From positions 94,054,001 to 94,118,000 of the forward strand of contig NC_043004.1 of assembly GCF_006345805.1 (NCBI RefSeq): a DNA stretch of 64,000 nucleotides, written 5' to 3'. The notes below the pieces were generated by a model. That model did no database searches, was not told the origin of the DNA, and saw only the letters and a list, made by a program, of their open reading frames with translations. Origin of the DNA: Octopus sinensis (taxonomy: Eukaryota). The position numbers were made by a program, and so were the translations under genes. Each line of letters opens with the position of its first letter. The stretch's first letter is position 1. Below, in pieces: positions 2,205 through 34,813 of this stretch.

Positions 2205-2933
2205 CAATGTTTTTCAACCGGGGTTCCGATGGCCCTGAGAATCTATGTACGATTTTCGGGGTTTTTGAGCAACAAAATAGTAAATTGGGCATCTGCAATG
2301 ATATTTTAAGGGTCCCTGAAAAAAATTATTTTAGATGTATGTATTGCAAGAAACATCCTGGTTTCTTTCTCTAGCATCTTACATAATTCAACCTACACAC
2401 GTTAATGAATGAAAAACACAATTGGAATTTTAAAAGAAGTTACTATTAAATTAGTAGTGGCTGTGTGGTAAGTAGCTTGCTAACCAACCACATGGTTCCG
2501 GGTTCAGTCCCACTGCGTGGCATCTTGGGTAAGTGTCTTCTGCTATAGCCCCGGGCCGACCAATGCCTTGTGAATGGATTTGGTAGACGGAAACTGAAAG
2601 AAGCCTGTCCTATATATGTATATATATATATATGTGTTTGTGTGTGTCCCCCCTACATCACTTTACAAACGATGCTGGTGTGTTTACGTCCCCGTTACTT
2701 ATCGGTTCGGCAAAAGAGACCGATAGAATAAGTACTGGGCTTACAAAGAATAAGTCCCGGGGTCGATTTGCTCGACTAAAGGCGGTGCTCCAGCATGGCC
2801 GCAGTCAAATGACTGAAACAAGTAAAAGAGTAAAAGAGTAAAGAGTAAACATCGAATGGCTAAGGGGTCCACCAGAATAAAATTGTAACCAAGTGGAGTA
2901 CATAGATAATAAAAAAATGGTTGAGAACCCCTG
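2205..2933. mobile_element. hAT-type MITE containing a nested SINE A
   Basis: TIRs caatgtttttcaacc / ggttgagaacccctg and a perfect 8-bp TSD ctgtagag (2197-2204, 2934-2941). Confidence 0.85.
2456..2849 (+). mobile_element. SINE family A copy nested in hAT MITE
   Basis: Full head-to-tail match. Confidence 0.9.
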
Positions 2934-3220
2934 CTGTAGAGTATAAATTAAGGTGGATTTGACTGCTATTTTTAACAGGCCCCGTGACCCGCATAGAGGT
3001 TCCTCGTTGAACATAGGATAAATTATCTTGGATGCTTCAGTGAATTGCTAGACAAATGGCGACTGGCTGTGTTAATAAACTAAAAACAAAATAACTGACA
3101 TTCTTTTTATACGATATGCTCAGTGAAGCATAGTTACAATAATACCGACTTTTGTATGGGTCGCGGTATATATGGCGACGTCCTGGATTTATTTCTGTCG
3201 ACAGATAGACAGAGACAGAC

Positions 3221-3279
<59 letters not shown>

Positions 3280-3554
3280 GGCAGATGTTGTGTCAATCAT
3301 GCTATTCTGAGCGTCTTAACATATCAGTTACATCTTTGACAGCGGTAAGCACACTACTTATCTACAGTAGTGAATTTGATAGTTGTCTTTGTGTTGCCGG
3401 ATTAACAGCCAAAACAACAGTAATACGAAGAGTTACCATTAAAAAAATTTTTTTTTAAACCCCAAAAAACAATGGAAATATTTATTTATTGTTTCTCACT
3501 CTCCTTTTAGCCTTGCGTTGATTCTTCTAATCCCTTCTATTATAAGCACATTCG

Positions 3555-4460
3555 GCTTTGCCTTTCATCCTTTTGGGGTTGATCAATCAAGTACCAGTTG
3601 CGTACAGGGGATCGATCTAATCGACTGGTCCCCTTCCCAAAATTTAAGGCCTTGTGCCTAGAGCAGAAAAGCTTATAGGCACAAGCCCTGATATTTTAAG
3701 GGAGTGAGGCCTAGTCGATTACATTGACCCCAGAGTTCAACTGGTATTAATTTATCGAGCTCGAAGGGATGAAAAGAAAAGTCAATTCAGTGCAATTTGA
3801 ACTCAGAATGTACAGACGGATGAAATGCCACAAAGCATGTGTCCGGCGTGTTAACGATTCTGCCAGCTTACCGCCTTAATAGTAATAATAATAAACCTTT
3901 CTATTAAGGGCCACAAGGCTTGAAATTTCGGGGGAGGGAACGAGTCAATTACATTGACTCCAGTGTTTCACTGGTACTTAATTTATCGACCGCGAAAGAA
4001 TGAAAGAGAAAGTCATTTACGGTGTAATTTGAACTCAGAGTGTAAAGACGGACGAAAGGCCGCCAAGTATGTTGTCCGGCGTGCTAACGATTCTTGTTTC
4101 TTTATTACCCACAAGGGGATAAACATAGAGGGGACAAACAAGGACAGACAAAGGTATTAAGTCGCTTACATCGACCCCAATGCGTAACTGGTACTTAATT
4201 CATCGACCCCGAAAGGATGAAAGGCAAAGTCGACCATGGCAGAATTTGAACTCAGAACGTACGATTCTATGAACTTGCCACCTTTTTGATTTTTATAATG
4301 ACTAAGCAATAATAGCGGCTGATTGGCAAAATCGTTAGAGCGTGGAATAAGGTTCTTGCGATATTTAGTTACAGCTCCTCACTTTCTGAGTTCAAAGGCT
4401 GCCGAGATCAAATTTGTATTCATTTCTAGTATTAATAATCCTTTCATTGTCAATAACATT
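3555..4460. mobile_element. Cluster of about 5 SINE family B copies and fragments in both orientations
   Basis: Repeated atcgaccccgaaaggatgaaaggcaaagtcgac...gaatttgaactcagaacgt core. Confidence 0.8.
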
Positions 4461-6106
4461 AATTAGGAGAGAAGTTCTCAGTATCAACCTCATATTCCTG
4501 TAAAGTATTACAAATATGAATGAAGGTGAAAGAGGAAACTAACACTAAAGGCGCAAACATAGCCGTGCGCTTAAGGAATTCGATTCGCGACCTCAGGGTT
4601 CCAGATACGGAACGTTATTTTAGGCAAGGGTCGTAGCCTCTATTGCAAGCATTCAGGTCAGGTCCCCAATGTGATGAAACCTTCTAACTTACCTCCTTCC
4701 CAACTGATAGATATGTGTGTGTATATATACATACATACATATATGTGTGTGTGTGTGTGTGTGTGTGTAAAGCTATAAATAATAGCGTAAGAATATTGGG
4801 TTAAAAACCCTTTGGATAGAAACGGTCGAAAGTAGACCGTGAGATTCGAACCCATATTTTCTCTAAACCGTCGTTCTACCATTGGACCAATCGAAACCGT
4901 CGAACCGCCTTATCCGGTTTAGAAACTTTGTTCTTATCAGCGGAAAATGAATGTTTTGTACGTCATACAAATGTAGATACTTCGAGAGGACATGGAATAA
5001 TTCGTTCTATTTTAAAGGTTGAACTCGAAATAAATAAAGGTATAAATAAGTGCTAACGGTTCCACCAGCTTTCTGTTGTTTGTGTTGCTGTAGTTATTTA
5101 GTCTCATGTCAAATCTAATTGAACAGGTCTATTGGCAAGGGCCGGCATATCTAGTTAAACTGATTCACAAAATATGTATTTTTTTAAAAGGAAGTAAAAA
5201 CGATGTGAAAATCAGCTATAACAATGTAGCTTTCCAGTCTTATTGCTATGAAGGCATGACGTTGTGGAGAAAAAAAAATTGGAGGAAAAAGTTACAGAGG
5301 TTTAAAAATCGAAAAAAACTGTATTTTTAGCCAATGGCGAGGCAGAAATTTTCTGCGTTTAGCGGAGCGGTGTCAACTTTAAGGTTGTACCTTGTGAAAT
5401 TTATAGTTTAGTGTCTGTGAAATGACGCGTTCATTGTAGGTTTCTAAATAAACAGAAATACCTACTTTCATTGTAGGTTTCTAAATAAGCAGAACTACCT
5501 AATAAAAGCAACATGTATCATCTTACTGTTTCTTTTGTCTCTTCATTGACTGCATGTTTTTATTATTTCTTTTAATTTGTTATATTAATTTGTCTGCATG
5601 CGTTTGCTTTATGCGCATTTTATTATCATGTATACCTGCGCGCGTGTGTGTGAAAAGGGGGCCCCTGTCTACAAAAGTCTAAAGTTGAGTAACGTTTTCA
5701 TTCTTGGATTTCTAAACTACGATAAGAATAAAACTAGTCAACAAAGAATTTGTGCACAAGAAAAAGAATACCTGTATCATATATGTTTTTGCATGCAAAA
5801 TTCAAAAAATAATATCAAATTATCTGTATCACCCACAGTTTCTCTGTTCCACAATATCCCTCTCAGTTCCTGTTACGTGGGCTAAATTTCAGTTAAGCTG
5901 TTGAAGCTAATAGTTTAAGAAATACTCCTAATTTAAATGTTTATGAATAGAATTAACCTAGTAAAATCATAAATCCAACTATCTGAGTCAATGAGTCCCT
6001 GAAGCTTGGCAATACTGAATCGATGAGCCACCATTTTGTCAGTACTGTGCTTGAAGTGTATGTGGGCGGTTGTGTACTAAGTTCCCATATTCCATTCACC
6101 TTCATA

Positions 6107-6180
6107 ATGCCAGGAAACTGTATAAACATAGTAAACAACTTTTGTTACATTTGCAGTGACTTAACATCCAAAACACAAAA
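6107..6180 (+). pseudogene. N-terminal relic of a DNA-transposon-associated protein (superfamily not determined)
   Basis: MPGNCINIVNNFCYICSDLTSKTQ resembles the MPxxCxNxxxxFCYICG start that I recall from widespread invertebrate transposon ORFs. Similarity stops after about 24 codons. Confidence 0.4.
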
Positions 6181-7518
6181 CACGCGGGTGAAAAATCAAC
6201 AGAGAACAACGTATGGCACAGACACAGGTGAAGTGAAACACAAAACAGCGTGCGGTTGTCATGGTAACAAGCTGCTAATACCACGCTGTCTGTTGATTGG
6301 CTAAAATTACCCAAATTTCTCAACTTTAATTATTCCAAATAACATCAGATTCTTTAATTTGCGAGATAAAGTAATTGGTCGATCGTAATCAAAATTCAGA
6401 GTTGCATTGATACACCAAAATTGAAAGCAATATGAGCAAAATTAAAGGGGCCGGCTACCCGAATTATGCTGTCTTCCTTATCTGTCAGTGGGCTTCTAGT
6501 TTTGTTAGATATCGTGGTTTAACTTGATAGAATTTGACTGCTATTTCTACCATCTCATGTCGCAATGTAGAGGGTCCCTCTGGTCCGTAAGGGAAATAGT
6601 TGCGTGTATGCATGTGTGTGTATGTGTATGATATGTGCGTCGGGTGTAAAAGCGAAATACAGTCACCGAAAAAGCATTCGAGCATCTACAATATTTCACC
6701 CACCCTGTCTCTGTGAAAAGCCATTTCATTCCACTTCAGTTTCGATGTGGAACTACTAAACTGTGAAATCAATCACCCATGTCAAATTTGTCACACTTCC
6801 CCTTTTTTTTTTATTTGTGCGGGAGCAACCGAAGACCTTTCCTTCTCCCTATCTCCGCCTATTTCTCAATTACCTACTCCACATCAAGAGTTACTTGAAG
6901 TGATGTGGGTTAATAAAGATGGCGTCAAGCTAGTATGACACAGTCTGTTAAAGTTTACACTAGTGTGTGATATATATAATTGTTTGCATGCCCTTGCTTA
7001 TATAGATAAGCTTACGTTATCGTTGTAATAACCGTTGTTGACTTTAAGCGTATGTATCGACATGTGACACATGTAATTTTGTTGTTTTCGATACCTACAT
7101 AAACACACACACACAAACATTGTGTGTGTGTGCGTGTGTGTGTGCGTGTGTGTGTGCGCGCACAAATATAACTCATAGACACACATATACACACTTATAT
7201 GTGTATTCATACGTATATATGTATGTATATACGTAATATAAATAATATATAAATATATGCATATATATATACATACATATATGTACATACCTACATCTAT
7301 ATGTATATATACATGCATATATGGATACAGGACATCAAAACAAAAAAAACCTTGGACACAATGAGAAACGAAAACATAAAAACAAAAACATGGAAACGAA
7401 CTCTTTTTTCAAACATACAACACAAGGAGTTTCTCATTGTGTTCAACGTTTTTTTTATGTCCTGTACTCATATATGCATGTATATATACATATAGATGTA
7501 GGTATGTACGAGTGGCTA

Positions 7519-7912
7519 TAGGCGCAGGAGTGGCTGTGTGGTAAGTAGTTTACTAACCAACCACATGGTTCCAGGTTCAGTCCCACTGCGTGGCAACTTG
7601 GGCAAGTGTCTTCTGCTATAGCCCCGGGCCGACCAATGCCTTGTGAGTGGATTTGGTAGACGGAAACTGAAAGAAGCCTGTCGTATATATGTATATATGT
7701 ATATATATATATGTGTGTCTGTGTTTGTCCCCTTAGCATTGCTTGACAACCGATGCTGGTGTGCTTACGTCCCCGTCACTTAGCGGTTCGGCAAAAGAGA
7801 CCGATAGAATAAGTACTGGGCTTACAAAGAATAAGTCCTGGAGTCGAGTTGCTCGACTAAAGGTGGTGCTCCAGCATGGCCGCAGTCAAATGACTGAAAC
7901 AAGTAAAAGAGA
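7519..7912 (+). mobile_element. SINE family A copy
   Basis: Full head-to-tail match. Confidence 0.9.
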
Positions 7913-8068
7913 GTATATGTATGTATATATGCATATATTTATATATTATTTATATTATTATATGATCGAACGCCATGCATCCTTTTCCAAGTATGTATAT
8001 ACATACTTATACATGCATGTGCGTGTGTGTTTGTATACGTACTTGCATATGGATATATATCTTTTGTC

Positions 8069-8263
8069 TTTTTACTGTTTTCATTCACCAGACTGGAGCC
8101 ATGCTGGAGCACTGCTTTGAGTAATTTTTTGGAAGTCTGTTACTTGTTCTATCAGTGTCTTTTGCTGAAACGCTAAATTATGGGGACGTAAATACACCAA
8201 CACCGTTTGTCAGGCGGTGTGTGTATGTGAGGGGGACAAACACATATGCAAGACACACGCACG

Positions 8264-8314
<51 letters not shown>

Positions 8315-8464
8315 CGACGAGCTTCATTCAGTTTCCGTCTACCAAATCCACTCACAAACCATTGGTCGGTCCGAAGCTATAGTAGAAGACAGTCGCCCAA
8401 GGTACCACGAAGTTGGATTGAACCCGGAACCATGTGGTTGAAAAGTTTCTTACCATACAGCCAC
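8069..8464 (-). mobile_element. SINE family A, diverged copy
   Basis: Colinear match with many substitutions. Confidence 0.8.
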
Positions 8465-9421
8465 GGGATGAAAGCGTTCAGCAGTGATGTGTATAAATAC
8501 AAACCTGTTGCCAGTTCAAATATGCATCAGGGATATTCGAACTCGTAAGAAAGCCATTCACTGTGTTTGCTATGGAGAAAATTTTGTGCTGTAGGCAGAT
8601 TAAATACACCGAGTCACTTCGCAGAATTCCGTAAACAGACAGTTGAATGCATGCATTTCGGAGAGGTTATTTTCTCTTCAGCCCCAGATGTCGGAAAAGT
8701 AAACCTTGCGAACTGACAAGAGAGACAGATCTCTCTTATACACCCCGCTTTGTACATGACTGGTTGCGCTGGTATACTTGAGGCATATTCGAACTCGTAT
8801 GAAAGCCATTCACTGTGATCCAATTACTGAAACAAGTAAAAGATAAAAAATCAAAAGATATATTTAGTCTAGTGATGACCTGCGACAATACTGGCAGAAA
8901 CCTAAATATCTAAAGTATACATAGACACACGCACATCATGGACAAAGACATACATACCTTCACAGATATTTAGTTTCACGTTTCTTTTTTTATATAATTG
9001 AAAGGTAAAAACTACCGACACCTAATATCGAATGCCCGCCACATCTACTGTTTCATGTTTCACTGAATAAGAATGCAGAAAATGTCTTCTGACTCAAGGA
9101 CTCTTGACCCACAGGATTTGGTTGTAAGCTAATAGCTACATCATTACTCTTTACTTTCTCCTTGCTACTTTAAATAATGTCAAGGATATACATTTATGGC
9201 TTTGTTTTGTCCTCGACTCTGTTCGCTTCTCTGATAACTGTCATGTTGTTTGAAACGCCTTTGATCGAATTACATTTGTTATTGACTTTCATACATTCCT
9301 GCTTTCTTCTGCCGACATTTTTATTTTTAATTTAACTCATCACTCTTGTTTCTTTGTAATCTTCTTTTGTTGAGTCTTTTTCTTTTCCTTCTAATACTAC
9401 TCGTACAGCTACATTTTCACT

Positions 9422-9440
9422 ACACACACACACACACACA

Positions 9441-9525
<85 letters not shown>

Positions 9526-9717
9526 ATGTATATAATACTCACATATGTATGTCTATGGACACATATATATGCATAAATATACACATATAATGTACATAAA
9601 TTTCTATGCATACATACATACATAATGCATACATGCATACATACGTACATACATACATACATACATACATACATACATACATACATACATACATACATAC
9701 ATACATACATACATACA
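9422..9717. repeat. (CA)n and (TACA)n microsatellites
   Basis: Direct reading. Confidence 0.95.
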
Positions 9718-10653
9718 TGGTGGTGCTGTTAAATTAGACATGGTCTGGACCAATCTCTGGTCGAAACATGTCTAAGTTATCCAGGTTTTATATATATATA
9801 TATGTCACATACCAGGTTCTCATAGATTTAATTAAGGCATTTGGCACAGTAAACAGGGAGGCGCTGTGGATTGTTTTGTGTAAACATGGTTACCAAACAC
9901 ATTAAGGAACTACGGAGAAATATGAAAAAAAAGATGCTTCTCTAGCCTATACTGTTCTCTCCCACTATCGTTTTCTCTCTCATCCTTTCTCTAATTCCTT
10001 TTTCTTTCCTCTTCACCGTTTTCAATCTGTCTCTCTCTCTCTCTCCCCTTTCTCCTTTACTCTCTCTCGTTGCTCACACGTGACCATTGTCCATCTTTCT
10101 TTTCCTCACGTAATCATCTTTCTTTTCTTTCAGGGCTGTCCTAGAGACTGGACGTATCCTATCTATCTCTCTCTTCTATCTTTTCCCCTGTCAAAGAAAA
10201 TATTTCTCCCAGCGTTCACTATTTCCCTCTCGCTCTGGTCTAACGACCCTCCGTGTTTGATTTCGTTCGGTTTTCTTGTATGTCTCCACTGTCCTGTTTT
10301 TGTTCCCATCTTTGACATTCCATAAATCCCAAATTTTATTTTGGCATTTGTGGGAGCAACTGCCTTCGAAGACTCATATTGTCGTTCAATGAAATTAGAA
10401 GTAGATTGGCAACCGACAACTGATGAAGGGCCGTTCTTTATGTTACTTGTCCTGTTTTCCATTTGTTTCTCTCGTTGTTTGCGTATTCAACTCATTTGTT
10501 TTCGTATTTCATAAATATATCTCTTAAAATGAGGTGTGAATGTTATTTTCATTGTTGTGTAATTTAGATGACAATTTATTCATCGCACCCTGTGTGTGTG
10601 TGTGTGTGTGTTTGTGTGTATGTGTGCGTGCGTGCATGCACACACATATATAC

Positions 10654-10697
<44 letters not shown>

Positions 10698-11075
10698 TGA
10701 TAGACATATATATTGATAGATACACATATGTGTGTGTATATTTATATGTATGCATATATATGTAGCTAGGCAGATATACAGGTATGTATACGCATACACA
10801 CACATAGACACATAAACATACGTTTATAATGTATTGTCTTGCAGACGCATTAGTGACTACGTATGTCTGTGTGCGTTTGTGTATACTGGTTATAGATGAT
10901 GTGACGAGTTTGTCTCTTTATTTCACATGGTAACCTAGCCATTCAGTAAATAGAGAGTGATAAAATAGCTATCAATTGAAACAAGTACTGAAGTTCCTTA
11001 CGATCGATTAGAACTATTGAAGGCGTTTCCATGGCCGAAGCCGCAACCTGATACGAGTGAAATCATGGAAGGCAT

Positions 11076-11076
11076 G

Positions 11077-11128
<52 letters not shown>

Positions 11129-11232
11129 AAGAAAGAGAGAGAGGGAGGGAGGGAGAGAGATGTAAATAGATTAAGAAAGAAAGATAAGAAGGAAAAAAGA
11201 AAGAAACAAATAGGTAAATAAATAGATAGATA

Positions 11233-11272
<40 letters not shown>

Positions 11273-11377
11273 CAGAAAGAGAGAGAGAGAAAGAAAAAGG
11301 AAAGAAATAAAAGAAAGGAAAGAAAGAAAGAAAGAAAGAAGAAAGAGAGAAAGAAAAAAGAAAGAAAGAAAGAAAGA
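11076..11377. repeat. (GA)n/(GAAA)n purine tract
   Basis: Direct reading. Confidence 0.95.
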
Positions 11378-12058
11378 AGTGTGCTAAGGATACTTTGCCG
11401 GATAGATGGACACGCAGATGGAGGTATGTGTTCATACATGAGCTGTATCTAACAAACACACTAATAACATAGTAAGCGTGTTTTATCTGAACGAATCAGA
11501 TAAATATCATACACCATGCAATGACAGACACACATTACTTATTGCTGTAATGACACCTCAGGTTTAATGTCGTCTGCAAAACTGGAAACGATCCACCATT
11601 TTGTTTGAATTGCTAATCTGCTCATTCACGTGTGCCAGGAAACAGAGAACATGATGTCTTTTATAGTTTAACTCTTTAGAATATGAACATAAATTTGTAT
11701 ACTCTACCTGACAGGTCTACTTGAAATAATAAAATCTCCAAGAAGACCACAGGAAAATCAGAATGTCGCCGAACTGGTTTCATTGCGAAAATCAAATTAT
11801 GTAATCACCATAAGCATACACAAACACAAATGAACGTACACATACGCACACATACTATTTGCAACAAATGTACATACGTGTAAACATACATGTACACATA
11901 TGTTTACAGACTCACCTCCAGTTACAAAGGCATATATTTATTTACGCTATATTTAACCCCAATTTTATTGCTCTCATGCAAGAATTCACGTATTTGGACG
12001 CTTGCATAAGATCATACATACAACACACCTTTCACCAGGGAGTGATGAACGCACCTCG

Positions 12059-12123
<65 letters not shown>

Positions 12124-13459
12124 ATATCTATCTATCTTATTACATATATAATTATCTCTCTATACATACACACATATGCAGTCAACCACACACAAATACA
12201 GTATATGTATATATATGCAAGTGTATGTATGTGTATGTATGTATGTATGTATGTTTATAAAGTCAGTGAGAAAGAAAATGAGAGAAACAGACGACAATGC
12301 AACAGCGATTGAGAACAAAAGTCGGTTTTTACTAGTTTGTTCTTTATTTATATAAACATACATCTTTAATAAGCTAAATTTGATCCCGTGATAGATAATA
12401 TATTGGTTTTAGCATTTGATGAATCTTCCCAATGTTTCTCATGAGTTATCGTATTGTTCTATTGTTTTTATTTGTTCTTCAGTTTTCAGATATCATCCTT
12501 GCTGGGCGTCATGGCTGCCAGTCTTCGCCTCTTTCTCTATTTATTCATTCGCCTATCTCGTTATACCAGACGGAGTCAGTATAAATGCATGAATATATTA
12601 AAAGCATGTATCAGCCATATTTCATAAAATGCAATTCTTTCTAGCAAACGAGTGAGAACTCTACGTGGTCATTCCTTTAGCAAGAAATAGTAGCTAAATT
12701 TCCTTCACATTACACTCTACTATCAGCCACTGCTCAATAACAACCTCAATTTTCTTTCTCATTAATCTTAGCATCTTCATAAAATATTTCGAAATTTTAT
12801 CGAAAACATTGGCTATTACATTTTTGATTTGTAGCCAGAGTTGTGTTGTGTTTAACAAATTTGTTTCACAACTACGTAGTTTTGTGTTCAATCCCACTGC
12901 AAGGCACCTTGAGCAAGTGTCTTTTAACATACCCTCAGCTCAAGCAAAAGCTTGGAACGTCTTGTAAACGGAAACTGTGTGAACGTCAGTCGGAGAGATC
13001 ATTCCCATTTTTGAATGGTAAACTCAGTAAAAATGTCACCAAGTTTAACATCGACACCTAACCCTTCGGTTAGCATTCGAACCAGGTCTCCAGTCAGAAT
13101 AGCTTCCTTCTTTTCTTCCACGTCCCTTCTTTTTTTCCTCTTTTCTTTCTTCCTTTCTTTCCTTCCTTTGATCCTTCCTTCGATCCTTCCTTCGATATTT
13201 CCTTCATTCGTTCGTTCGTTCGTTTCTTCGTTCCTTCCTTCTTTAGTTTAACCAGTCTTGGAGTTCTGTTTTGACTGGAATGGGCAAAAGGTAATTGCTT
13301 CTGTTGACGTTTGGCTTCAGATTGGTTTTCAGGTTGAACAAATTTATACGAAACAGCTACACATTGTATGTTGTTACTGTTTTGTTTTCTTTCTGGAACA
13401 TAGTGAATCTATAAGCACGATATACAAAATGTTCCCCCACAAAACAACAACAACAACAA

Positions 13460-13593
13460 TAATGATGATGATGATGATGATCATCATCATGATGATGATG
13501 ATCATGATGATGATCATGATGATGATCATGATGATGATCATGATGATGATGATCATGATGATCCTGATGATGATGATGATGATGATGATGATC
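13460..13593. repeat. (ATG)n with periodic ATC variants
   Basis: Direct reading. Confidence 0.95.
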
Positions 13594-14180
13594 AAGTCCC
13601 CTTTTTAAGACAACTGTCACAGCGTATACCTGACGTGAACTGTTCTGCCAAGGGCAGCAAATATATTCTCAGGCTTCGTGTGTATATAAGGAACAATTAT
13701 AATGTTTCCTCCAGCATGAACATTTGTGTTAATTGGAGTTAATTACAGCAGAGCAGAGCCTTGTAATGAAGTAATATATAAACCAATATGTCAATGGTCG
13801 CCAACTTGACACTTTCTGGACAGATACAAGGAACTAGCATAACAAACGACTTGTCTTTTAAGAACAAACAGGGAATCACATACACAACGACGATGAAGAG
13901 AACAATGATGATAATGATACGTCACTATTTCTCCTATTCCTACTCCTTTTCCTTCTCCTTTCTCCCTTATCATCATCACAAGACCGCCACGCCAATGTCA
14001 ACGGTATGACAAGCAATTTGTCCGGCTGACTGCTCCCACCTCTCCTGGCGTCGGCTGTTAAACCCACCAGTGTTAAAACATTGGCAATCTTCGTTTCTGT
14101 CCGAATGGGACAGAATACTTCCCCTAACAGGCTCACACTCAGTGATGTTCAGTTTAAACCTCTATATAGAAAATATGGAG

Positions 14181-14433
14181 CAGTGTTTTTCAACCATTTT
14201 TTTTTTTACCTATGGAGCCTTTTCACTTGGATGGACCCTCATAGGCATTCGATGTTAAAAAAAAAAAGAAATATTGTATTTTTATAATTAGATATTATTA
14301 GGAATTGTATTTAAAAAAATGTGAAAATATTTTTTGTATTGTAGAAGCATAACTAATTTATTGCAGAATTTTTAACGAACAAAATTTTATATTGACCCTC
14401 AAGGGCCATATGGACCCCGGTTGAGAACCACTG
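14181..14433. mobile_element. hAT-type MITE
   Basis: TIRs cagtgtttttcaacc / ggttgagaaccactg. The 8-bp flanks are only partly alike (atatggag/gtctggtg). Confidence 0.75.
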
Positions 14434-14537
14434 GTCTGGTGGGCTACAGACTGATTAAGGTATTTTGTGCGGTGGGGTATGATAAAAAGAAGTTGTAGAA
14501 ATTGTAGAAAGAATGAAAGAATTTGCAGGTTTAAGGT

Positions 14538-14849
14538 AAAGTTACTTTCTCAAGTCATACCGACTCATAAAGGCCGGTTTCTCGGTATCATGGCGTATAA
14601 ATTCCCCAGTTGGATGGGACACAAGTCTGTTGTAGAATTATTCATTTTTGCCAGCTGAGTGGACTGGAGCAACGTGAAATGAAGTGTTTTGCTCAAGAAC
14701 GCAACGCGTCGCCCGATCCAGGAATCGAAACCTCAATATTACGATCATGACTGCAACAACTTAACCACTAAGCCACTCGCTTCCACAAAGTTACCTTTGC
14801 GAAATATGCCGACTCATAACACCCTAACCACTAAGCTACGTGCTTCCAC
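14538..14849 (-). mobile_element. SINE family E (tRNA head, D-type core, distinct tail) plus a 62-bp head-tail mini copy in tandem
   Basis: Full copy at 14538-14787 and mini copy at 14788-14849. Confidence 0.7.
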
Positions 14850-15711
14850 TAATTTGCTGGTTTGGGGGAATCCCATTCCCCCAAACGGCTTGGAAGTAGA
14901 GTTCAGTGTTGTATCACAGGAAGGAAAATTTAGAAGAAATAGTATCTGTACAAGGTAGCGGTTGTAGCTATTTAGTGAGTAAACGTTTCCCTATTTGTGT
15001 AAGGGATTTCATTTGGTTGCAGTTTAGAATGTTAGAGTGAAACAGCAGCATCTTCCCAGATATGTGAGCATTATTCCGATGTCGGTCTAAAATGTCTGCG
15101 TATATATGAGCAGTACGTATATGCATGTATGAGTAACACTGTCGTTGATGCATGAGTAATAATCTAATGCCGATCTAAGATGTTTGTGAGCGCAACAGCA
15201 GTATTGTCTTAGATATATGAGCAGTACGTCTAAGGTATTTGTGTATGTAACAGAACACTGTCCTACAGAAGATATTTTTGTAGATAACATCAGTAAAGTA
15301 CTAAATATGTGAGAAGTACTCTAATGTAACTCTCTCTCTTTTCTCTTTTACTTGTTTCAGTCATTTGACTGCGGCCATGCTGGAGCACCGCCTTTAGTCG
15401 AGCAAATCGACCCCGGAACTTATTCTTTGTAAGCCCAGTACTTATTCTATCGGTCTCTTTTGCTGAACCGCTAAGTGACGGGGACGTAAACACACCAGCA
15501 TCGGTTGTCAAGCAATGCTAGGGGGACAAACACACACACATACACACACATATATATACACATATATATACGACAGGCTTCTTTCAGTTTCCGTCTACCA
15601 AATCCACTCACAAGGCATTGGTCGGCCCGGGGCTATAGCAGAAGACACTTGCCCAAGATGCCACGCAGTGGGACTGAACCCGGAACTATGTGGTTGGTTA
15701 GCAAGCTACTT

Positions 15712-17732
15712 TATTTCAAAAATTTTTGCCACTAGGGCAGCACACAGAGTAGCTACGGGCTGGACAAGGACATTAATGAATGATGGTGATGGATGAAGAT
15801 GGTGATGGGAGAAGACAAAAGCGCCCGCCGGCTTTCGCTTCTCTAAGACATTGTTCAAAATTTACAATCAATACAATAGTTACAAATTTTAAAGGAGGCA
15901 ATGAACCCCCTCTTCAACATGTTACAAAATGTTCCAAAAAGCCTATGTAACCCGGCCGACCATCGCTCTTACCTCATCGAGGCAATAATCGCTGGTCAGG
16001 TCGGGGTCCATAGGTATGATCTTGTATGAGTCCACCGGGAAGGAACCCACGATCCTGCCTAGATTACCCCTTCCTACGACCTCCGCAGTCAACTGCGAAG
16101 TCCACTTGGGGTCCTCCGTACAGGACCGGAGTCCCTCCCAATGTCCTCTCTTTCTCAATTTGTGTACGGTGTTCTCCTTTGAAAAAGAGGAGCACAAAGT
16201 CTTCTACAAATTGTCCCTCAGGCGGCACACCCGCCCGAGAGGACCCGGGAGACTCGGGAGACGCCGTCTGCGTATCACAATCCGCCGGCGGCGTTCCGTT
16301 TCTCCTTTTTTTCTTATTTTTTTGGCCTTGGGCCACGGGAGGTTGAGGTTCCGGAGCTGCACGTACCGGGTTCTCCTCTCCCGCAGCTTTCAGGTCCTTT
16401 GGTGGGTCGCCATTGCTCCCCACCTTTCTCTTTCTTTTGGAGGAAGTTTTTTCCCCCTCCTCATTTTGTTTCTCTCCCTCCATTGAGGAGGCAGGGAGAG
16501 GCTCCGATATCAGCCGCTCCAGGATCCTACTCTGGTCCCTGGGGCAGTTCTTCTTGATGTGGCCGGTCTCCAAACACAGGTGACACTTGGTGGGGGGGGG
16601 GGCGTCCCTCAAGCATCACCGGATACTTGGACCCGGCCATCCTCAAAAAGTCCGGCAAAACCAGACTCTTGGCTGACTGGGTCCATAGGGTCAAAGTAGC
16701 CTTTGACCCCTCCCAATCAGCCGCGGGCTGTATTCTAACATTTATGATCTTAGTGCTACTATCACCCAGACCCCGGCGGATAGAGTCTTCTATCCACTCG
16801 GGTTCAAAGCCGGGTGGCAGGCCGCAGATCCATAGTCTTGTTAATTTTTCTCCCTTGTAACTAATGAGAAATAAAATCTCTTTGCCCTCAATGGGCTTGC
16901 TTGCGAAATCGCAAGCTGCTTTTGGGGAGTCAAACAGCAACCAAACCGTCGCGTATTTGGCTCCCCGTGCAATGTGTTTCACGACTGGCATATAATCTGC
17001 CAGCTCGTCAATTATTTTTGCCTTCGGAAAGACCGCGATGGTGTTGAGCGACTTCGAATAAGTCCTCAGTACCACGGTCTTATCCTCCAGCTGTTTTAAA
17101 TACTTTTTGGGAGCTTCCAGCTCCCACACATTTAGTTCTTTTGCCATTTTTAACAAAATGGAATGACAGTTCAATAGGAGCAAAACAAATGCGACAGAAA
17201 GTAAGAAGAGAAAAGAAATGGAAACGAAGAATTACAGTAAAAATACAGTTCAGAGTTCAAATAAAGGATAGCTAGAAGAAAGAGAGTTCAAATTTGGCAA
17301 AGAATTAATATTTTTTTGGCCGAAAAGGTAGTCCAGGCCAAGCGTCAACGGCAAACCTTGGTTATTCTTGGTACTTCCAAAAAAAAACAGTCTTCGAATA
17401 TCCCTGGTGCCTCCTGGTAATCCAAAAGTGAATCAATATTTTTGAGGAGGGGCTACGCCTCCTCAAAAAACACAATACTCACTAAAAAGTGAGACTTTAA
17501 ATTCGACAACAGGCAGAAAAAATATATCTGGAGCAAAGTGAAGTTTATTACCCGCAAAAAAATATTAATGCTAAATAACATTAACTGCTAAATAACATTA
17601 AAAGCAAGCAATAAACCTCACTAAGCTCCTAAAAATATAAAACGTCCTACCTGTCGTCGTCAAAAAGTTCAATATTTCACGTGGCAACACGTGACATTCG
17701 GAGTAGCAAAAAAACACGTCCGACCAAGTCGA
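15712..17732 (-). mobile_element. ORF1-only non-LTR retroelement (half-L1/HAL1-like)
   Basis: Flanked by a 17-bp direct repeat, tggttagcaagctactt (15695-15711) and tggttagcgagctactt (17733-17749), which splits a SINE A head. Layout is a 585-nt 5' UTR, ORF1 and a 352-nt 3' region ending at AATAAA overlapping the junction. No RT or endonuclease motifs are visible. Confidence 0.8.
16064..17147 (-). CDS. L1/Tx1-like ORF1 (gag-like nucleic-acid-binding protein, RRM-like region plus CCHC zinc knuckle), about 360 aa if one +1 homopolymer frameshift is corrected
   Basis: Track ORFs 16527-17183 and 16064-16612 join across a G11 run (16592-16602) to give ...RLWICGLPPGFEPEWI...YPVMLEGRPPP/TKCHLCLETGHIKKNC.... 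xEGRP followed by CX2CX4HX4C is typical of L1/Tx1 ORF1. First ATG is at 17147; a K/E/P-rich tail follows. Confidence 0.8.
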
Positions 17733-18265
17733 TGGTTAGCGAGCTACTTACCACACAGCCACTCCTGCGCCTGTAAGTGTAAGATGTTTGTGTGTGTAAC
17801 GGGTACACTGATACATATTGACAAGGTGTAGCCTAAATGTAGGCTCAGTGTGGTCGTGGATGTAGTAGAGCATCGTCTCAGATACTTGAGCAGTTCTTTA
17901 ATTATGCTTAGTGATGTTTGCATATACAGTAACACTGATCCTGATATGAGCTAGCTTTCTCTTTGCTTGGCTGCTTCGAATCAAATTCAATAACGGTGAA
18001 ATTCCAGTAATTAGAATTTGCTTGGACTTTCCATTTGCTCAAGAAACTTTGGATATTGTTCAGTTGAACCATTTTACACGCTTCATTTTACATAAATGCT
18101 TTGTATTTAGAACAAATCATTTATAAGAATTGGTTGCACAATCTCATTTTCAGAACAACTCGCAGTTTTCTTTAATTTCGTTCTTCCTTATCATGAAGAC
18201 TCAAGTATAGACAGGAAGATGATTTCACTGCTACAGTAACAAGCATACATATCCTTGTTGTCTTA

Positions 18266-20297: not shown

Positions 20298-20664
20298 CAG
20301 GAGTGGCTGTGTGGTAAGTAGCTTGCTAACCAACCACATGGTTCCGGGTTCAGTCCCACTGCGTGGCATCTTGGGCAAGTGTCTTCTGCTATAGCCTCGG
20401 GCCGACCAAAGCCTTGTGAGTGGATTTGGTAGACGGAAACTGAAAGAAGCTTGTCGTATATATATATATATAAGTGTGTGTGTATATGTTTGTGTGTCTG
20501 TGTTTGTCCCCGTTACTTAGCGGTTCGGCAAAAGAGACCGATAGAATAAGTACTGGGCTTACAAAGAATAAGTCCCGGGGTTGATTTGCTCGACTAAAGG
20601 TGGTGCTCCAGCATGGCCGCAGTCAAATGACTGAAACAAGTAAAAGAGTAAAAGAGTAAAAGAG
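20298..20664 (+). mobile_element. SINE family A copy with an internal deletion of about 40 bp
   Basis: The deletion lies between two GTCCCC motifs. Confidence 0.9.
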
Positions 20665-29405: not shown

Positions 29406-29826
29406 TAGGTGTAGGAGTGGCTGTGTGGTAAGTAGCTTGCTTACCAACCACATGATTCCGGGTTCAGTCCCACTGCGTGGCACCTTGGGCAAGTGTCTTC
29501 TACTATAGCTTCGGGCCGGCCAAAACTTTGTGATTGGATTTGGTAGACGGAAACTGAAAGAAGCCCGTCGTATATATGTATATATATATATGCGTGTGTT
29601 TGTGTGTTTGTGTGTTTGTGTTTGTCCGCCGCCCCCCTCCAACATCGCTTGACAACCGATGCTGGTGTGTTTACGTCCCCATAACTTAGCGGTTCGGCAA
29701 AAGACACCGATAGAATAAGTACTGGGCTTACAAGAGAATAAGTCCCGGGGTCGAGTTGCTCGACTAAAGGCAGTGCTCCAGCATGGTCACAGTCAAATGA
29801 CTTAAACAAGTAATAGAGAATAAAAG
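29406..29826 (+). mobile_element. SINE family A copy
   Basis: Full head-to-tail match. Confidence 0.9.
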
Positions 29827-34713: not shown

Positions 34714-34813
34714 NNNNNNNNNNNNNNNNNNNNNNNNNNNNNNNNNNNNNNNNNNNNNNNNNNNNNNNNNNNNNNNNNNNNNNNNNNNNNNNNNNNNNNN
34801 NNNNNNNNNNNNN
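34714..34813. other. Assembly gap of exactly 100 N
   Basis: The round number suggests a placeholder gap of unknown true size. Confidence 0.98.

What the first reader, a model, noticed from the sequence alone, without database searches (positions are those of the whole stretch)
15712..17732. ORF1-only (half-LINE) retroelement with complete ends: a candidate HAL1-like non-autonomous family in a cephalopod
Seen: a 2021-bp insert with a 17-bp TSD (1 mismatch), a long 5' UTR, one about 360-aa ORF with an RRM-like region and an EGRP-CX2CX4HX4C knuckle, and a 3' region ending in AATAAA. There is no APE endonuclease or RT anywhere. Established: L1/Tx1 ORF1 proteins have this architecture, TSDs of this size come from target-primed reverse transcription, and ORF1-only HAL1 elements are known in mammals. 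Inference: the element was retrotransposed in this ORF2-less form, so it makes its own RNA chaperone while borrowing RT/EN in trans. I know of no description in octopus but could not search.
Basis: partly seen in the sequence, partly recalled or inferred. Interest (0 to 1): 0.8.

Follow-up and report, generated by a model that had tools for sequence, protein, structure and literature searches.

The report
ORF1-only LINE copy inside an octopus SINE
A 2-kb retrotransposon copy that carries only the RNA-binding first gene of an L1/Tx1-type LINE, and no reverse transcriptase, sits inside a SINE repeat; this kind of parasite-of-a-parasite is known from mammals and flies, and I found no report of it in cephalopods.

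Summary
Window 15712-17732 (minus strand) is a 2,021-bp insert flanked by a 17-bp target-site duplication with one mismatch. Joining the flanks rebuilds an uninterrupted SINE.

The insert has a 585-nt 5' UTR, one broken ORF and a roughly 230-nt 3' UTR. It has no ORF2, LTRs or TIRs. The ORF encodes two RRM-like folds (AlphaFold pLDDT above 90) and a CCHC knuckle.

A profile search links this ORF to the ORF1 of complete bicistronic LINEs in Octopus sinensis, O. vulgaris and Argonauta. Their ORF2 (APE, RT, zf-RVT) best matches human L1 ORF2p.

Two diverged O. sinensis relatives have a homologous 5' UTR and ORF and also show no ORF2. Pairwise dN/dS is 0.20-0.25 with dS about 1. This points to an old, selected ORF1-only lineage rather than a one-off deletion.

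- The window copy carries two frameshifts.
- The ancestral ORF is about 400 aa.
- There is no poly(A) tail.
- Two bases of the "AATAAA" belong to the duplicated target.

New finding: all three copies are preceded by the first 41-43 nt of the same SINE, in the same orientation. This suggests Tx1-like target preference or a captured SINE head.

Copy number could not be measured. Verdict: a new member of a known kind (HAL1- or HeT-A-like logic), of moderate interest.

The parts
15712..17732 (-). whole insert (2,021 bp): ORF1-only non-LTR retroelement copy
   Evidence: Bounded by the TSD. Removing it restores an intact SINE. No LTR or TIR. No ORF2 similarity.
17733..17749 (.). TSD copy next to the element's 5' end (minus strand AAGTAGCTCGCTAACCA)
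15695..15711 (.). TSD copy next to the element's 3' end (minus strand AAGTAGCTTGCTAACCA; matches the SINE consensus)
17148..17732 (-). 5' UTR (585 nt); two CACGTG boxes at 17678-17683 and 17688-17693
   Evidence: Weak but significant similarity to the regions upstream of the O. sinensis copies (Smith-Waterman z=14 with L001, 5.7 with L011; alignment). CACGTG boxes.
16599..17147 (-). ORF part 1 (183 codons): two tandem RRM-like domains (about 16857-17078 and 16611-16850)
   Evidence: AlphaFold pLDDT 84-98 per 10-residue block over residues 11-180. Foldseek top hits are tandem-RRM proteins at E about 3e-6. Profile homology to LINE ORF1 proteins.
16592..16602 (-). 11-base C homopolymer holding frameshift 1 (one extra base)
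   Evidence: The frames of the 206-aa and 182-aa pieces meet here. P0001 reads through as EGRPPKFHLC. An assembly error cannot be excluded.
16544..16585 (-). CCHC zinc knuckle, CHLCLETGHIKKNC
   Evidence: Exact CX2CX4HX4C. Pfam zf-CCHC E=0.019 here and above the cut-off in three of the ten relatives scanned.
16064..16591 (-). ORF part 2 (frame 2): knuckle, charged low-complexity linker, start of the C-terminal region; its TAA at 16064 is reached only because of frameshift 2
15943..16185 (-). ORF part 3 (third frame): C-terminal region ending at TAG 15943-15945; frameshift 2 lies at about 16100-16150
   Evidence: The L011 C-terminal peptide matches this frame (tblastn E=0.002, 76 aa). DNA alignment.
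15712..15942 (-). 3' UTR (about 230 nt), ends …TTTTTGAAATA, no poly(A) tail
   Evidence: No significant similarity to the 3' ends of the autonomous relatives, apart from a weak hit to the L012 3' UTR (z=4.9).
15561..15711 (-). host SINE, nt about 27 to the end (followed by a TA/TG microsatellite)
17733..17772 (-). host SINE head, nt about 4-43, same orientation as the element

Best explanation
The insert is a dead copy of a non-autonomous, ORF1-only derivative of an L1/Tx1-superfamily LINE.

The lineage keeps a 5' UTR, an ORF1 protein and a short 3' UTR. The protein has two RRM-like domains, a CCHC knuckle, a charged linker and a C-terminal region of about 100 aa. The lineage has no endonuclease or reverse transcriptase.

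Its RNA was copied into the genome by target-primed reverse transcription, which produced the 17-bp TSD. This used ORF2 protein supplied in trans by an autonomous L1/Tx1-like LINE; such LINEs, with a homologous ORF1, exist in octopods. This copy landed in the 5' head of a SINE, between the SINE's A-box-like and B-box-like motifs and in the SINE's orientation. It has since acquired two frameshifts.

Shown: the insertion and its exact ends, the absence of ORF2, ORF1 homology and fold, relatives without ORF2, and purifying selection on the protein.

Inferred: trans-mobilisation by a partner LINE, the RNA-chaperone or packaging role of the protein, and the size of the family.
For: - The TSD and the reconstructed empty site in a SINE.
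- No LTR or TIR. No APE or RT similarity in the insert or the window.
- A profile search found 59 relatives. These include O. sinensis P0004, O. vulgaris P0006 and Argonauta P0016. Their genes are followed within about 40-330 nt by an ORF2 with APE, RT and zf-RVT. That ORF2 is colinear with human L1 ORF2p at E=4e-42.
- The same ORF1-then-ORF2 layout occurs on a marine-metagenome contig. On a Logan contig (L004) it is read by eye only; ORF2 probes found nothing there.
- AlphaFold and Foldseek give two tandem RRM-like folds followed by the CCHC knuckle. This matches Type I ORF1p as defined in PMC5203782.
- The closest relatives are two O. sinensis copies: L001 (LOC115225585, 62-68% aa identity) and L011 (frameshifted). 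They share the ORF at 69-72% nt identity and a weakly homologous 5' UTR. Neither has ORF2 downstream.
- dN/dS is 0.20-0.25 with dS 0.95-1.6 for all three pairs. Most of the divergence therefore accrued while the protein was under selection.
- All three copies are themselves damaged. L001 is cut inside the C-terminal region, L011 has several frameshifts, and the window copy has two. This fits decayed copies of long-lived active lineages, not one host gene.
Against: - Only three copies were seen, and no cephalopod genome could be searched by DNA. Copy number, uniformity of length and a shared ORF1/3' junction are therefore untested.
- In L001 the 3' part is missing. In L011 the 3' end is undefined. 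ORF2-less insertion is strictly proven only for the window copy.
- No partner LINE sharing the 5' UTR or 3' tail was identified.
- The protein database holds only one close relative. This argues against a very abundant or highly expressed family, although repeats are usually masked before annotation.
- L001 is annotated as a gene with three isoforms.
Confidence: 0.75

Rival explanations
1. One-off internal deletion. A full-length bicistronic LINE copy lost ORF2, either during reverse transcription or splicing of its RNA, or by a later genomic deletion. No ORF1-only lineage exists.
For: Autonomous relatives with ORF1 directly followed by ORF2 exist in octopods. Just before the end of the coding region the window copy has GAG|GTAAGA, which resembles a splice donor, followed by an ATG also present in L011. 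Only the window copy has proven ends.
Against: Three copies separated by dS of about 1 all lack ORF2 and share a homologous 5' UTR and ORF. Two of them also share the C-terminal region up to the stop. dN/dS of 0.2 shows that the ORF-bearing lineages persisted under selection. The closest autonomous ORF1 proteins are only about 20% identical, so no recent ORF2-bearing parent is in sight.
Confidence: 0.08
2. Retrocopy of a domesticated host gene. An ORF1-derived cellular gene (the L1TD1 type of event) is expressed, and its mRNA is occasionally retrocopied by LINEs. The window insert is a processed pseudogene.
For: O. sinensis LOC115225585 is annotated as a gene with three protein isoforms. dN/dS is about 0.2. 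The close lineage is very rare in protein databases.
Against: - The insert has no poly(A) tail.
- L001 itself is truncated within the C-terminal region and frameshifted relative to the ancestral ORF, so it is not an intact gene.
- L011 against L001, within one genome, has dS of 0.95 yet dN/dS of 0.25. This implies at least two long-separated functional source lineages, as in TE subfamilies.
- The 5' UTR is conserved together with the ORF.
- All three copies share the junction with a SINE head.
Confidence: 0.1
3. This rival concerns the SINE association only. The first roughly 41 nt of the SINE would be carried by the element itself. They could have been acquired by template switching of the RT onto SINE RNA, or by 5' transduction from a master copy lying in a SINE. 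The association would then not reflect target-site preference, and the window insertion into a SINE would be coincidental or homology-assisted.
For: In L001 and L011 the SINE segment starts at the SINE's first bases and stops at model nt 41 in both. It is fused to the homologous 5' UTR, and no SINE remainder or TSD was found downstream. 5' heads added by template switch or transduction are described for Tx1-mobilised elements (PMC4494074).
Against: In the window, the SINE continues after the element from nt 27 with a 17-bp duplication, and both halves are close to the SINE consensus. That is a plain insertion into a SINE at nt 43, 2 nt from the L001/L011 junction. As a rough estimate, a chance hit at that spot and orientation has a probability of about 0.002 or less, using 3.6% SINE coverage here or 11.6% in O. 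vulgaris (PMC13282606).
Confidence: 0.35

Closest known systems
HAL1 (half-L1) of mammals
   Same: A non-autonomous LINE derivative that keeps only ORF1 and depends on ORF2 protein in trans. HAL1 arose repeatedly in mammals (PMC5753468, citing Smit 1999 and Bao & Jurka 2010). Here too ORF1 is under purifying selection.
   Different: HAL1 ORF1p is the mammalian Type II (Transposase_22: coiled coil, RRM, CTD). This protein has two RRM-like domains plus a CCHC knuckle (Type I), and Pfam gave no Transposase_22 hit. There is no A-tail. The host is a cephalopod. Copy number is unknown.
HeT-A and other ORF1-only telomeric Jockey-clade elements of Drosophila
   Same: ORF1-only (gag-like, CCHC) non-LTR elements that persist for long periods and depend on the ORF2 of other families. 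ORF1-only lineages can give rise to new ORF1-only lineages (bioRxiv 10.1101/2025.06.09.658640).
   Different: Those belong to the Jockey clade, have an MHR plus three knuckles, and insert only at chromosome ends. This element is L1/Tx1-related and interstitial, inside a SINE.
Tx1-clade LINEs with target preference and the SINEU elements they mobilise (Tx1-Mar, Keno)
   Same: Many Tx1-clade LINEs insert at specific positions of other transposons or small-RNA genes. Elements mobilised by them share that target and often carry small-RNA-derived heads at their 5' ends (PMC4494074). Here, three of three copies abut the first 41-43 nt of one SINE.
   Different: Clade assignment by RT phylogeny was not done. 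The autonomous relatives examined (L003, L012, L013) show no SINE-head junction. The element encodes a protein, unlike SINEU.
L1TD1 (domesticated L1 ORF1 gene of mammals)
   Same: An ORF1-derived coding sequence without ORF2 that is kept under selection (PMC4161310).
   Different: L1TD1 is a single syntenic host gene. This is a TSD-flanked insertion in a young SINE copy, with several diverged and damaged copies.

Membership tests
ORF1-only non-autonomous LINE derivative (HAL1-like in the broad sense) | ORF1 is homologous to the ORF1 of autonomous LINEs | tested here: met
   A profile search hit ORF1 proteins of bicistronic LINEs (E 1e-8 to 1e-16). Their ORF2 has APE, RT and zf-RVT.
ORF1-only non-autonomous LINE derivative (HAL1-like in the broad sense) | No ORF2 (EN/RT) within complete element ends | tested here: met
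   The 2,021-bp insert is bounded by a TSD. tblastn with ORF2 probes found nothing.
ORF1-only non-autonomous LINE derivative (HAL1-like in the broad sense) | Amplified as a family in the ORF2-less form (many copies, same internal junction, different TSDs) | tested here: inconclusive
   Only three copies are accessible (window, L001, L011). None has ORF2, but two lack defined 3' ends. A genome-wide DNA search was not possible.
ORF1-only non-autonomous LINE derivative (HAL1-like in the broad sense) | ORF1 maintained by purifying selection | tested here: met
   dN/dS of 0.20-0.25 for the three pairs.
HAL1 proper (mammalian L1 derivative) | Type II ORF1p (Transposase_22: coiled coil, RRM, CTD) | tested here: not met
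   No Pfam Transposase_22 hit. The model shows two RRM-like folds plus CCHC.
HAL1 proper (mammalian L1 derivative) | L1-type 3' end with a poly(A) tail | tested here: not met
   The element ends …GAAATA directly at the TSD.
Type I ORF1p (Khazina & Weichenrieder classes, as summarised in PMC5203782) | At least one RRM plus a CCHC zinc knuckle | tested here: met
   The high-confidence AlphaFold model matches tandem-RRM structures. The knuckle is an exact CX2CX4HX4C.
L1 superfamily (L1/Tx1) for the autonomous relatives | ORF2 with an N-terminal APE endonuclease, RT and a C-terminal zinc-binding domain, closest to L1 ORF2p | tested here: met
   Pfam hits to Exo_endo_phos, RVT_1 and zf-RVT. Colinear match to human L1 ORF2p at E=4e-42, against about 1e-19 for R2.
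Tx1 clade | RT-domain phylogeny placing the element within Tx1 | not tested
   No reference RT set (Repbase or RTclass1) was available.
Tx1 clade | Sequence-specific or target-preferring insertion | tested here: inconclusive
   Three of three copies of the ORF1-only lineage abut SINE nt 41-43. A downstream SINE half is seen only in the window. The autonomous relatives show no such junction.
Processed pseudogene of a host mRNA | Poly(A) tail at the 3' end; intron-bearing parent gene | tested here: not met
   No A-tail. The candidate parent L001 is itself truncated and frameshifted. The introns of a parent gene could not be tested.
LTR retrotransposon or DNA transposon fragment | Terminal direct or inverted repeats and a short fixed-length TSD | tested here: not met
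   No LTR or TIR. The TSD is 17 bp.

The most novel reading that the evidence does not exclude
The ORF1-only lineage, and by implication its unseen partner LINE, targets one spot in the 5' head of the most abundant octopus SINE. That spot is nt 41-43, between the A-box-like and B-box-like motifs, in the SINE's orientation. Hundreds of thousands of SINE copies would then serve as safe landing sites, and possibly as a source of the 5' end or transcription start. This would be a protein-coding 'half-LINE' that has persisted under selection for a long time as a site-specific parasite of both a LINE and a SINE.
Probability: 0.35. Interest if true: 0.7.

Novelty: new member of a known kind. Interest (0 to 1): 0.45.

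Why it matters
ORF1-only LINE derivatives show that the ORF1 protein alone can be worth keeping for a genomic parasite that borrows reverse transcriptase. So far they are documented in mammals (HAL1) and in Drosophila telomeres. A cephalopod lineage with a Type I (RRM plus CCHC) ORF1p under purifying selection would extend the phenomenon to the L1/Tx1 group in molluscs.

Octopus genomes have active LINEs, including 13 L1-Tx1 families with recent insertions in O. vulgaris (PMC13282606). LINE activity in the octopus brain is under discussion (PMC9115989).

If the SINE-head junction reflects target specificity, it would also point to the partner LINE's endonuclease specificity. It would give a natural system for studying how cis-preference of ORF2p is circumvented.

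Tried and rejected
1. C-terminal motif. Several family members share a C-terminal motif (…YRALK..FP.DVG…), which I thought I saw by eye in the window ORF. Two HMM tests gave no hit, so I dropped the idea. The C-terminal region is supported only by the L011 comparison.

2. TSDs or a SINE remainder downstream of L001 and L011. Nothing was found beyond chance level. One 10-mer with a mismatch was seen where about 2 are expected.

3. tRNA origin of the SINE head. ARAGORN found no tRNA in the window, and Rfam gave no tRNA hit even at E<=10 on an intact SINE copy. The A- and B-box resemblance is by eye only. The SINE's orientation rests on variable truncation at the head end and microsatellites at the tail end.

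4. A ribozyme or other known RNA in the element. No Rfam match.

5. Shared 5' UTR or 3' tail with the autonomous relatives (L003, L004, L012, L013) or with the L005 transcripts. None was found, except a weak AT-rich match to the L012 3' UTR at z=4.9.

6. Exact look-up of the window's ORF pieces in the 15-billion-protein collection, to identify the source genome or other copies. They are not present.

7. A second SINE family explaining the L001/L011 upstream similarity. No other copies of that sequence occur in about 250 kb of available octopod DNA.

8. Other copies of the element in the window. None.
Full report
**1. What is in the sequence**

The feature lies on the minus strand of the window. 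Reading the region and aligning its flanks with other repeats in the window shows that 15712-17732 is an insertion into a SINE copy. The 17-mer TGGTTAGC[A/G]AGCTACTT occurs at 15695-15711 and at 17733-17749, with one mismatch. Joining the flanks with a single copy of that 17-mer gives a sequence that aligns through the junction with at least ten other SINE copies in the window, the best at 96.6-97.6% identity. The empty site is thus reconstructed and the ends of the insert are exact. The insert has no terminal direct or inverted repeats. A 17-bp TSD without terminal repeats is what target-primed reverse transcription by an APE-type LINE produces (established knowledge).

**2. Anatomy of the insert (minus-strand order)**

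- A 585-nt 5' UTR with two CACGTG boxes near its start.
- A coding region starting at the ATG at 17147.
- A 3' UTR of about 230 nt ending …TTTTTGAAATA directly at the TSD.

The coding region is not one ORF. A 206-codon piece and a 182-codon piece are in different frames. They meet in a run of 11 C (16592-16602), which has one base too many compared with the O. sinensis relative. A homopolymer of that length could also be an assembly error.

Comparison with a second O. sinensis copy (L011) shows that the coding region continues in a third frame to the TAG at 15943. The support is a DNA alignment and a tblastn match of the L011 C-terminal peptide to 16185-15958 (E=0.002). The window copy therefore has two frameshifts, and the ancestral protein had about 400 residues rather than 360.

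No poly(A) tail follows.

**3. The protein**

Pfam recognises only a sub-threshold zinc knuckle, but the CX2CX4HX4C motif is exact.

The word-indexed search of 5.8 billion proteins found a single close relative: O. sinensis LOC115225585 (P0001, 281 aa, 61% identity by BLASTP, 68% over the RRM part). The exhaustive profile search of 1.84 billion cluster representatives found 59 relatives. Those that carry names come from O. sinensis, O. bimaculoides, O. vulgaris and Argonauta hians.

A 40-sequence alignment shows a conserved core: RG.KYGTVEV.F…L.P.Y.GRR…IPP…W, a second subdomain, and then EGRKP.C..CG..GH....C.

AlphaFold, run with this alignment, gives block-mean pLDDT of 84-98 for residues 11-180 (146 residues at 90 or above). 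It predicts two consecutive beta-alpha-beta-beta-alpha-beta units. Foldseek against the PDB returns tandem-RRM proteins as top hits at E of about 3e-6: NONO/SFPQ, hnRNP A1 UP1 and IMP3 RRM12. Two RRM-like domains followed by a CCHC knuckle is the Type I ORF1p architecture. That type is reported in plant L1s and in Tx1-like elements of non-mammalian animals (PMC5203782).

**4. It is an ORF1**

I fetched the genomic loci of several relatives.

- O. sinensis L003: the gene for P0004 is followed 200 nt downstream by ORFs with APE, RT and zf-RVT similarity.
- O. vulgaris L012: P0006 sits in a head-to-tail array of complete elements with a period of 5,278 bp, 98.6-99.3% identical.
- Argonauta L013: P0016 is followed 39 nt later by an 812-aa APE-RT ORF and a zf-RVT ORF.
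- A marine-metagenome contig (L002) shows the same ORF1-then-ORF2 layout.
- A Logan contig (L004) appears to by eye, with an ATG-led ORF at the contig end. The ORF2 probes found nothing in it.

The Argonauta ORF2 is colinear with human L1 ORF2p over APE and RT (E=4e-42), against about 1e-19 for R2 proteins. The protein family is therefore the ORF1 of L1-superfamily (L1/Tx1) LINEs. L1-Tx1 elements are already reported as present and recently active in octopods (PMC8967140, PMC13282606).

**5. No ORF2 in this lineage**

ORF2 probes taken from these relatives find nothing in the insert or anywhere in the 64-kb window.

The two closest relatives, both in O. sinensis, are L001 (P0001) and a frameshifted copy in L011. 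The latter was found through a chimeric gene model, P0019. They share the ORF with the window copy at 69-72% nucleotide identity.

The three 5' UTRs are weakly but significantly similar, with Smith-Waterman z-scores against shuffles of 14, 18.5 and 5.7 (alignment). The window copy and L011 also share the C-terminal region up to the stop.

Neither O. sinensis copy has ORF2 downstream. However, L001 is cut inside the C-terminal region by a microsatellite-like sequence, and the 3' end of L011 is undefined. Insertion in the ORF2-less form is therefore strictly shown only for the window copy.

**6. Selection**

Nei-Gojobori estimates on the in-frame parts give dN/dS of 0.20-0.25 and dS of 0.95-1.6 for all three pairs. 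This includes the two copies from the same genome. Most of the divergence thus accumulated while the protein was under purifying selection.

All three present-day copies are damaged. They must derive from at least two or three long-separated functional source lineages. That is the pattern of subfamilies of a mobile element. It is hard to reconcile with a one-off deletion, or with retrocopies of one host gene.

**7. An unexpected regularity: the SINE head**

The host SINE runs head to tail on the same strand as the element. Its orientation is inferred from two features: copies are variably truncated at one end and carry TA/TG microsatellites at the other. The element sits after SINE nt 43, and the TSD corresponds to SINE nt 27-43. 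By eye, this lies between an A-box-like motif (TGGCTGTGTGG) and a B-box-like motif (GGTTCAGTCCC). ARAGORN and Rfam do not call a tRNA.

In L001 and L011 the homologous 5' UTR is also directly preceded by the same SINE's head in the same orientation. A SINE profile built from 13 copies matches model nt 4-41 in both, and nothing else upstream or downstream. By local alignment the match reaches the SINE's first bases.

SINE coverage is 3.6% in this window and 11.6% in O. vulgaris (PMC13282606). By a rough estimate, a chance insertion in that orientation within a few bases of that position has a probability of about 0.002 or less.

Three readings remain:

- **Target preference.** This is known for many Tx1-clade LINEs, including preference for specific positions of other transposons (PMC4494074).
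- **A SINE head carried by the element.** It could have been added by template switching onto SINE RNA or by 5' transduction, as described for Tx1-mobilised SINEU elements in the same paper.
- **A combination of both.** The element is co-transcribed with the upstream target, which then guides 5' junction formation, as discussed there for R2.

The window copy is a plain insertion into a consensus-like SINE, which favours target preference. The absence of a downstream SINE half or TSD in L001 and L011 favours a carried head, or else loss of their 3' parts. The autonomous relatives I examined show no such junction. I could not resolve this with three copies.

**8. Mechanism proposed**

- **Shown:** a 2-kb RNA-derived insert with a TSD; an ORF1 of L1/Tx1 type with RRM-like and CCHC nucleic-acid-binding modules; no EN or RT.
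- **Inferred:** the lineage's RNA is translated into its own ORF1p. By analogy with other ORF1 proteins, this coats or chaperones the RNA. The RNA is then reverse-transcribed at a nicked target by ORF2p from an autonomous L1/Tx1-like LINE of the same genome.
- **Nick position:** the nick on the opposite strand falls at …AGCTACTT|ACCAC of the SINE, and at most two A/T base pairs are available for priming.
- **This copy:** it is now inactive.

**9. Comparison with what is known, and novelty**

ORF1-only derivatives are established in two cases. One is HAL1 in mammals, which arose several times (PMC5753468). The other is HeT-A and many other ORF1-only telomeric elements in Drosophila (bioRxiv 10.1101/2025.06.09.658640).

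This element works like them but is not a member of either. Its ORF1p is Type I, it has no A-tail, and its relatives are L1/Tx1-like LINEs of cephalopods.

My literature searches found no description of ORF1-only elements in cephalopods. Repbase and Dfam could not be consulted, so prior cataloguing cannot be excluded.

I rate it a new member of a known kind, of moderate interest. The SINE-head junction is the part most worth following up.

**10. Limits**

- No cephalopod genome could be searched at the DNA level.
- All statements about the family rest on one window and about 190 kb of fetched loci.
- The source species of the window was not identified. Its ORF pieces are absent from the protein collection. 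Its SINE consensus differs from the O. sinensis copies at the junction region: GCTTGCTAACC against GCTTGTTTACC.

Noticed in passing
L012 (O. vulgaris OX597840.1) 2445-17026: The autonomous L1/Tx1-like LINE encoding P0006 forms a head-to-tail tandem array. It has at least three units with a period of 5,278 bp, 98.6-99.3% identical. The 3' end …AAAACACTGATA joins directly to the 5' end AGGACGTTACTTTGAC. The marine-metagenome contig L002 likewise has a zf-RVT ORF just upstream of ORF1.
   Followed up: partly
L005-L010 (Logan SRR11869384-94), ORF at 253-1137: A different member of the ORF1 family (P0008, 294 aa, RRM-like plus CCHC) lies on contigs from six runs. Four of these are nearly identical at about 1.69-1.70 kb. 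The ORF is followed by about 560 nt of low-complexity sequence and no ORF2. This may be a second, independent ORF1-only transcript. The species is unknown.
   Followed up: partly
window 17678-17693 (minus-strand nt 40-55 of the element): Two CACGTG (E-box) palindromes lie 4 nt apart near the 5' end of the 5' UTR. They could be part of an internal promoter. They are not conserved in L001 or L011.
   Followed up: no
window 15962-15975 and L011 about 17620-17650: Near the end of the coding region, both the window copy and L011 have …GATGAGG(T/C)… followed by ATGGT. In the window, GAG|GTAAGA resembles a splice donor. This could be a remnant of the ORF1/ORF2 junction of an ancestral bicistronic element.
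   Followed up: no
window, 17 sites (e.g. 1070-1234, 2453-2617, 7517-7690, 20298-20465, 29407-29577): The same SINE of about 175 bp occurs 17 times (3.6% of the window). Copies are variably truncated at the 5' end and have TA/TG microsatellite tails. Long microsatellite and low-complexity tracts fill much of the window.
   Followed up: partly
window 34714-34813: A run of exactly 100 N (an assembly gap) lies inside a long low-complexity tract.
   Followed up: no
P0002 (1,434 aa, from the representative search): This protein consists of about 25 identical tandem repeats, each holding a CCHC knuckle (…RRTCYECGEKGHLSSLCPNK…). It matched the profile only through the knuckle and is probably unrelated.
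   Followed up: no
L003 8888-8980: An internally deleted SINE copy (model nt 4-67 joined to nt 141-167) lies about 1 kb upstream of ORF1 of the complete O. sinensis LINE. It is not a junction of the kind seen in the ORF1-only copies.
   Followed up: partly
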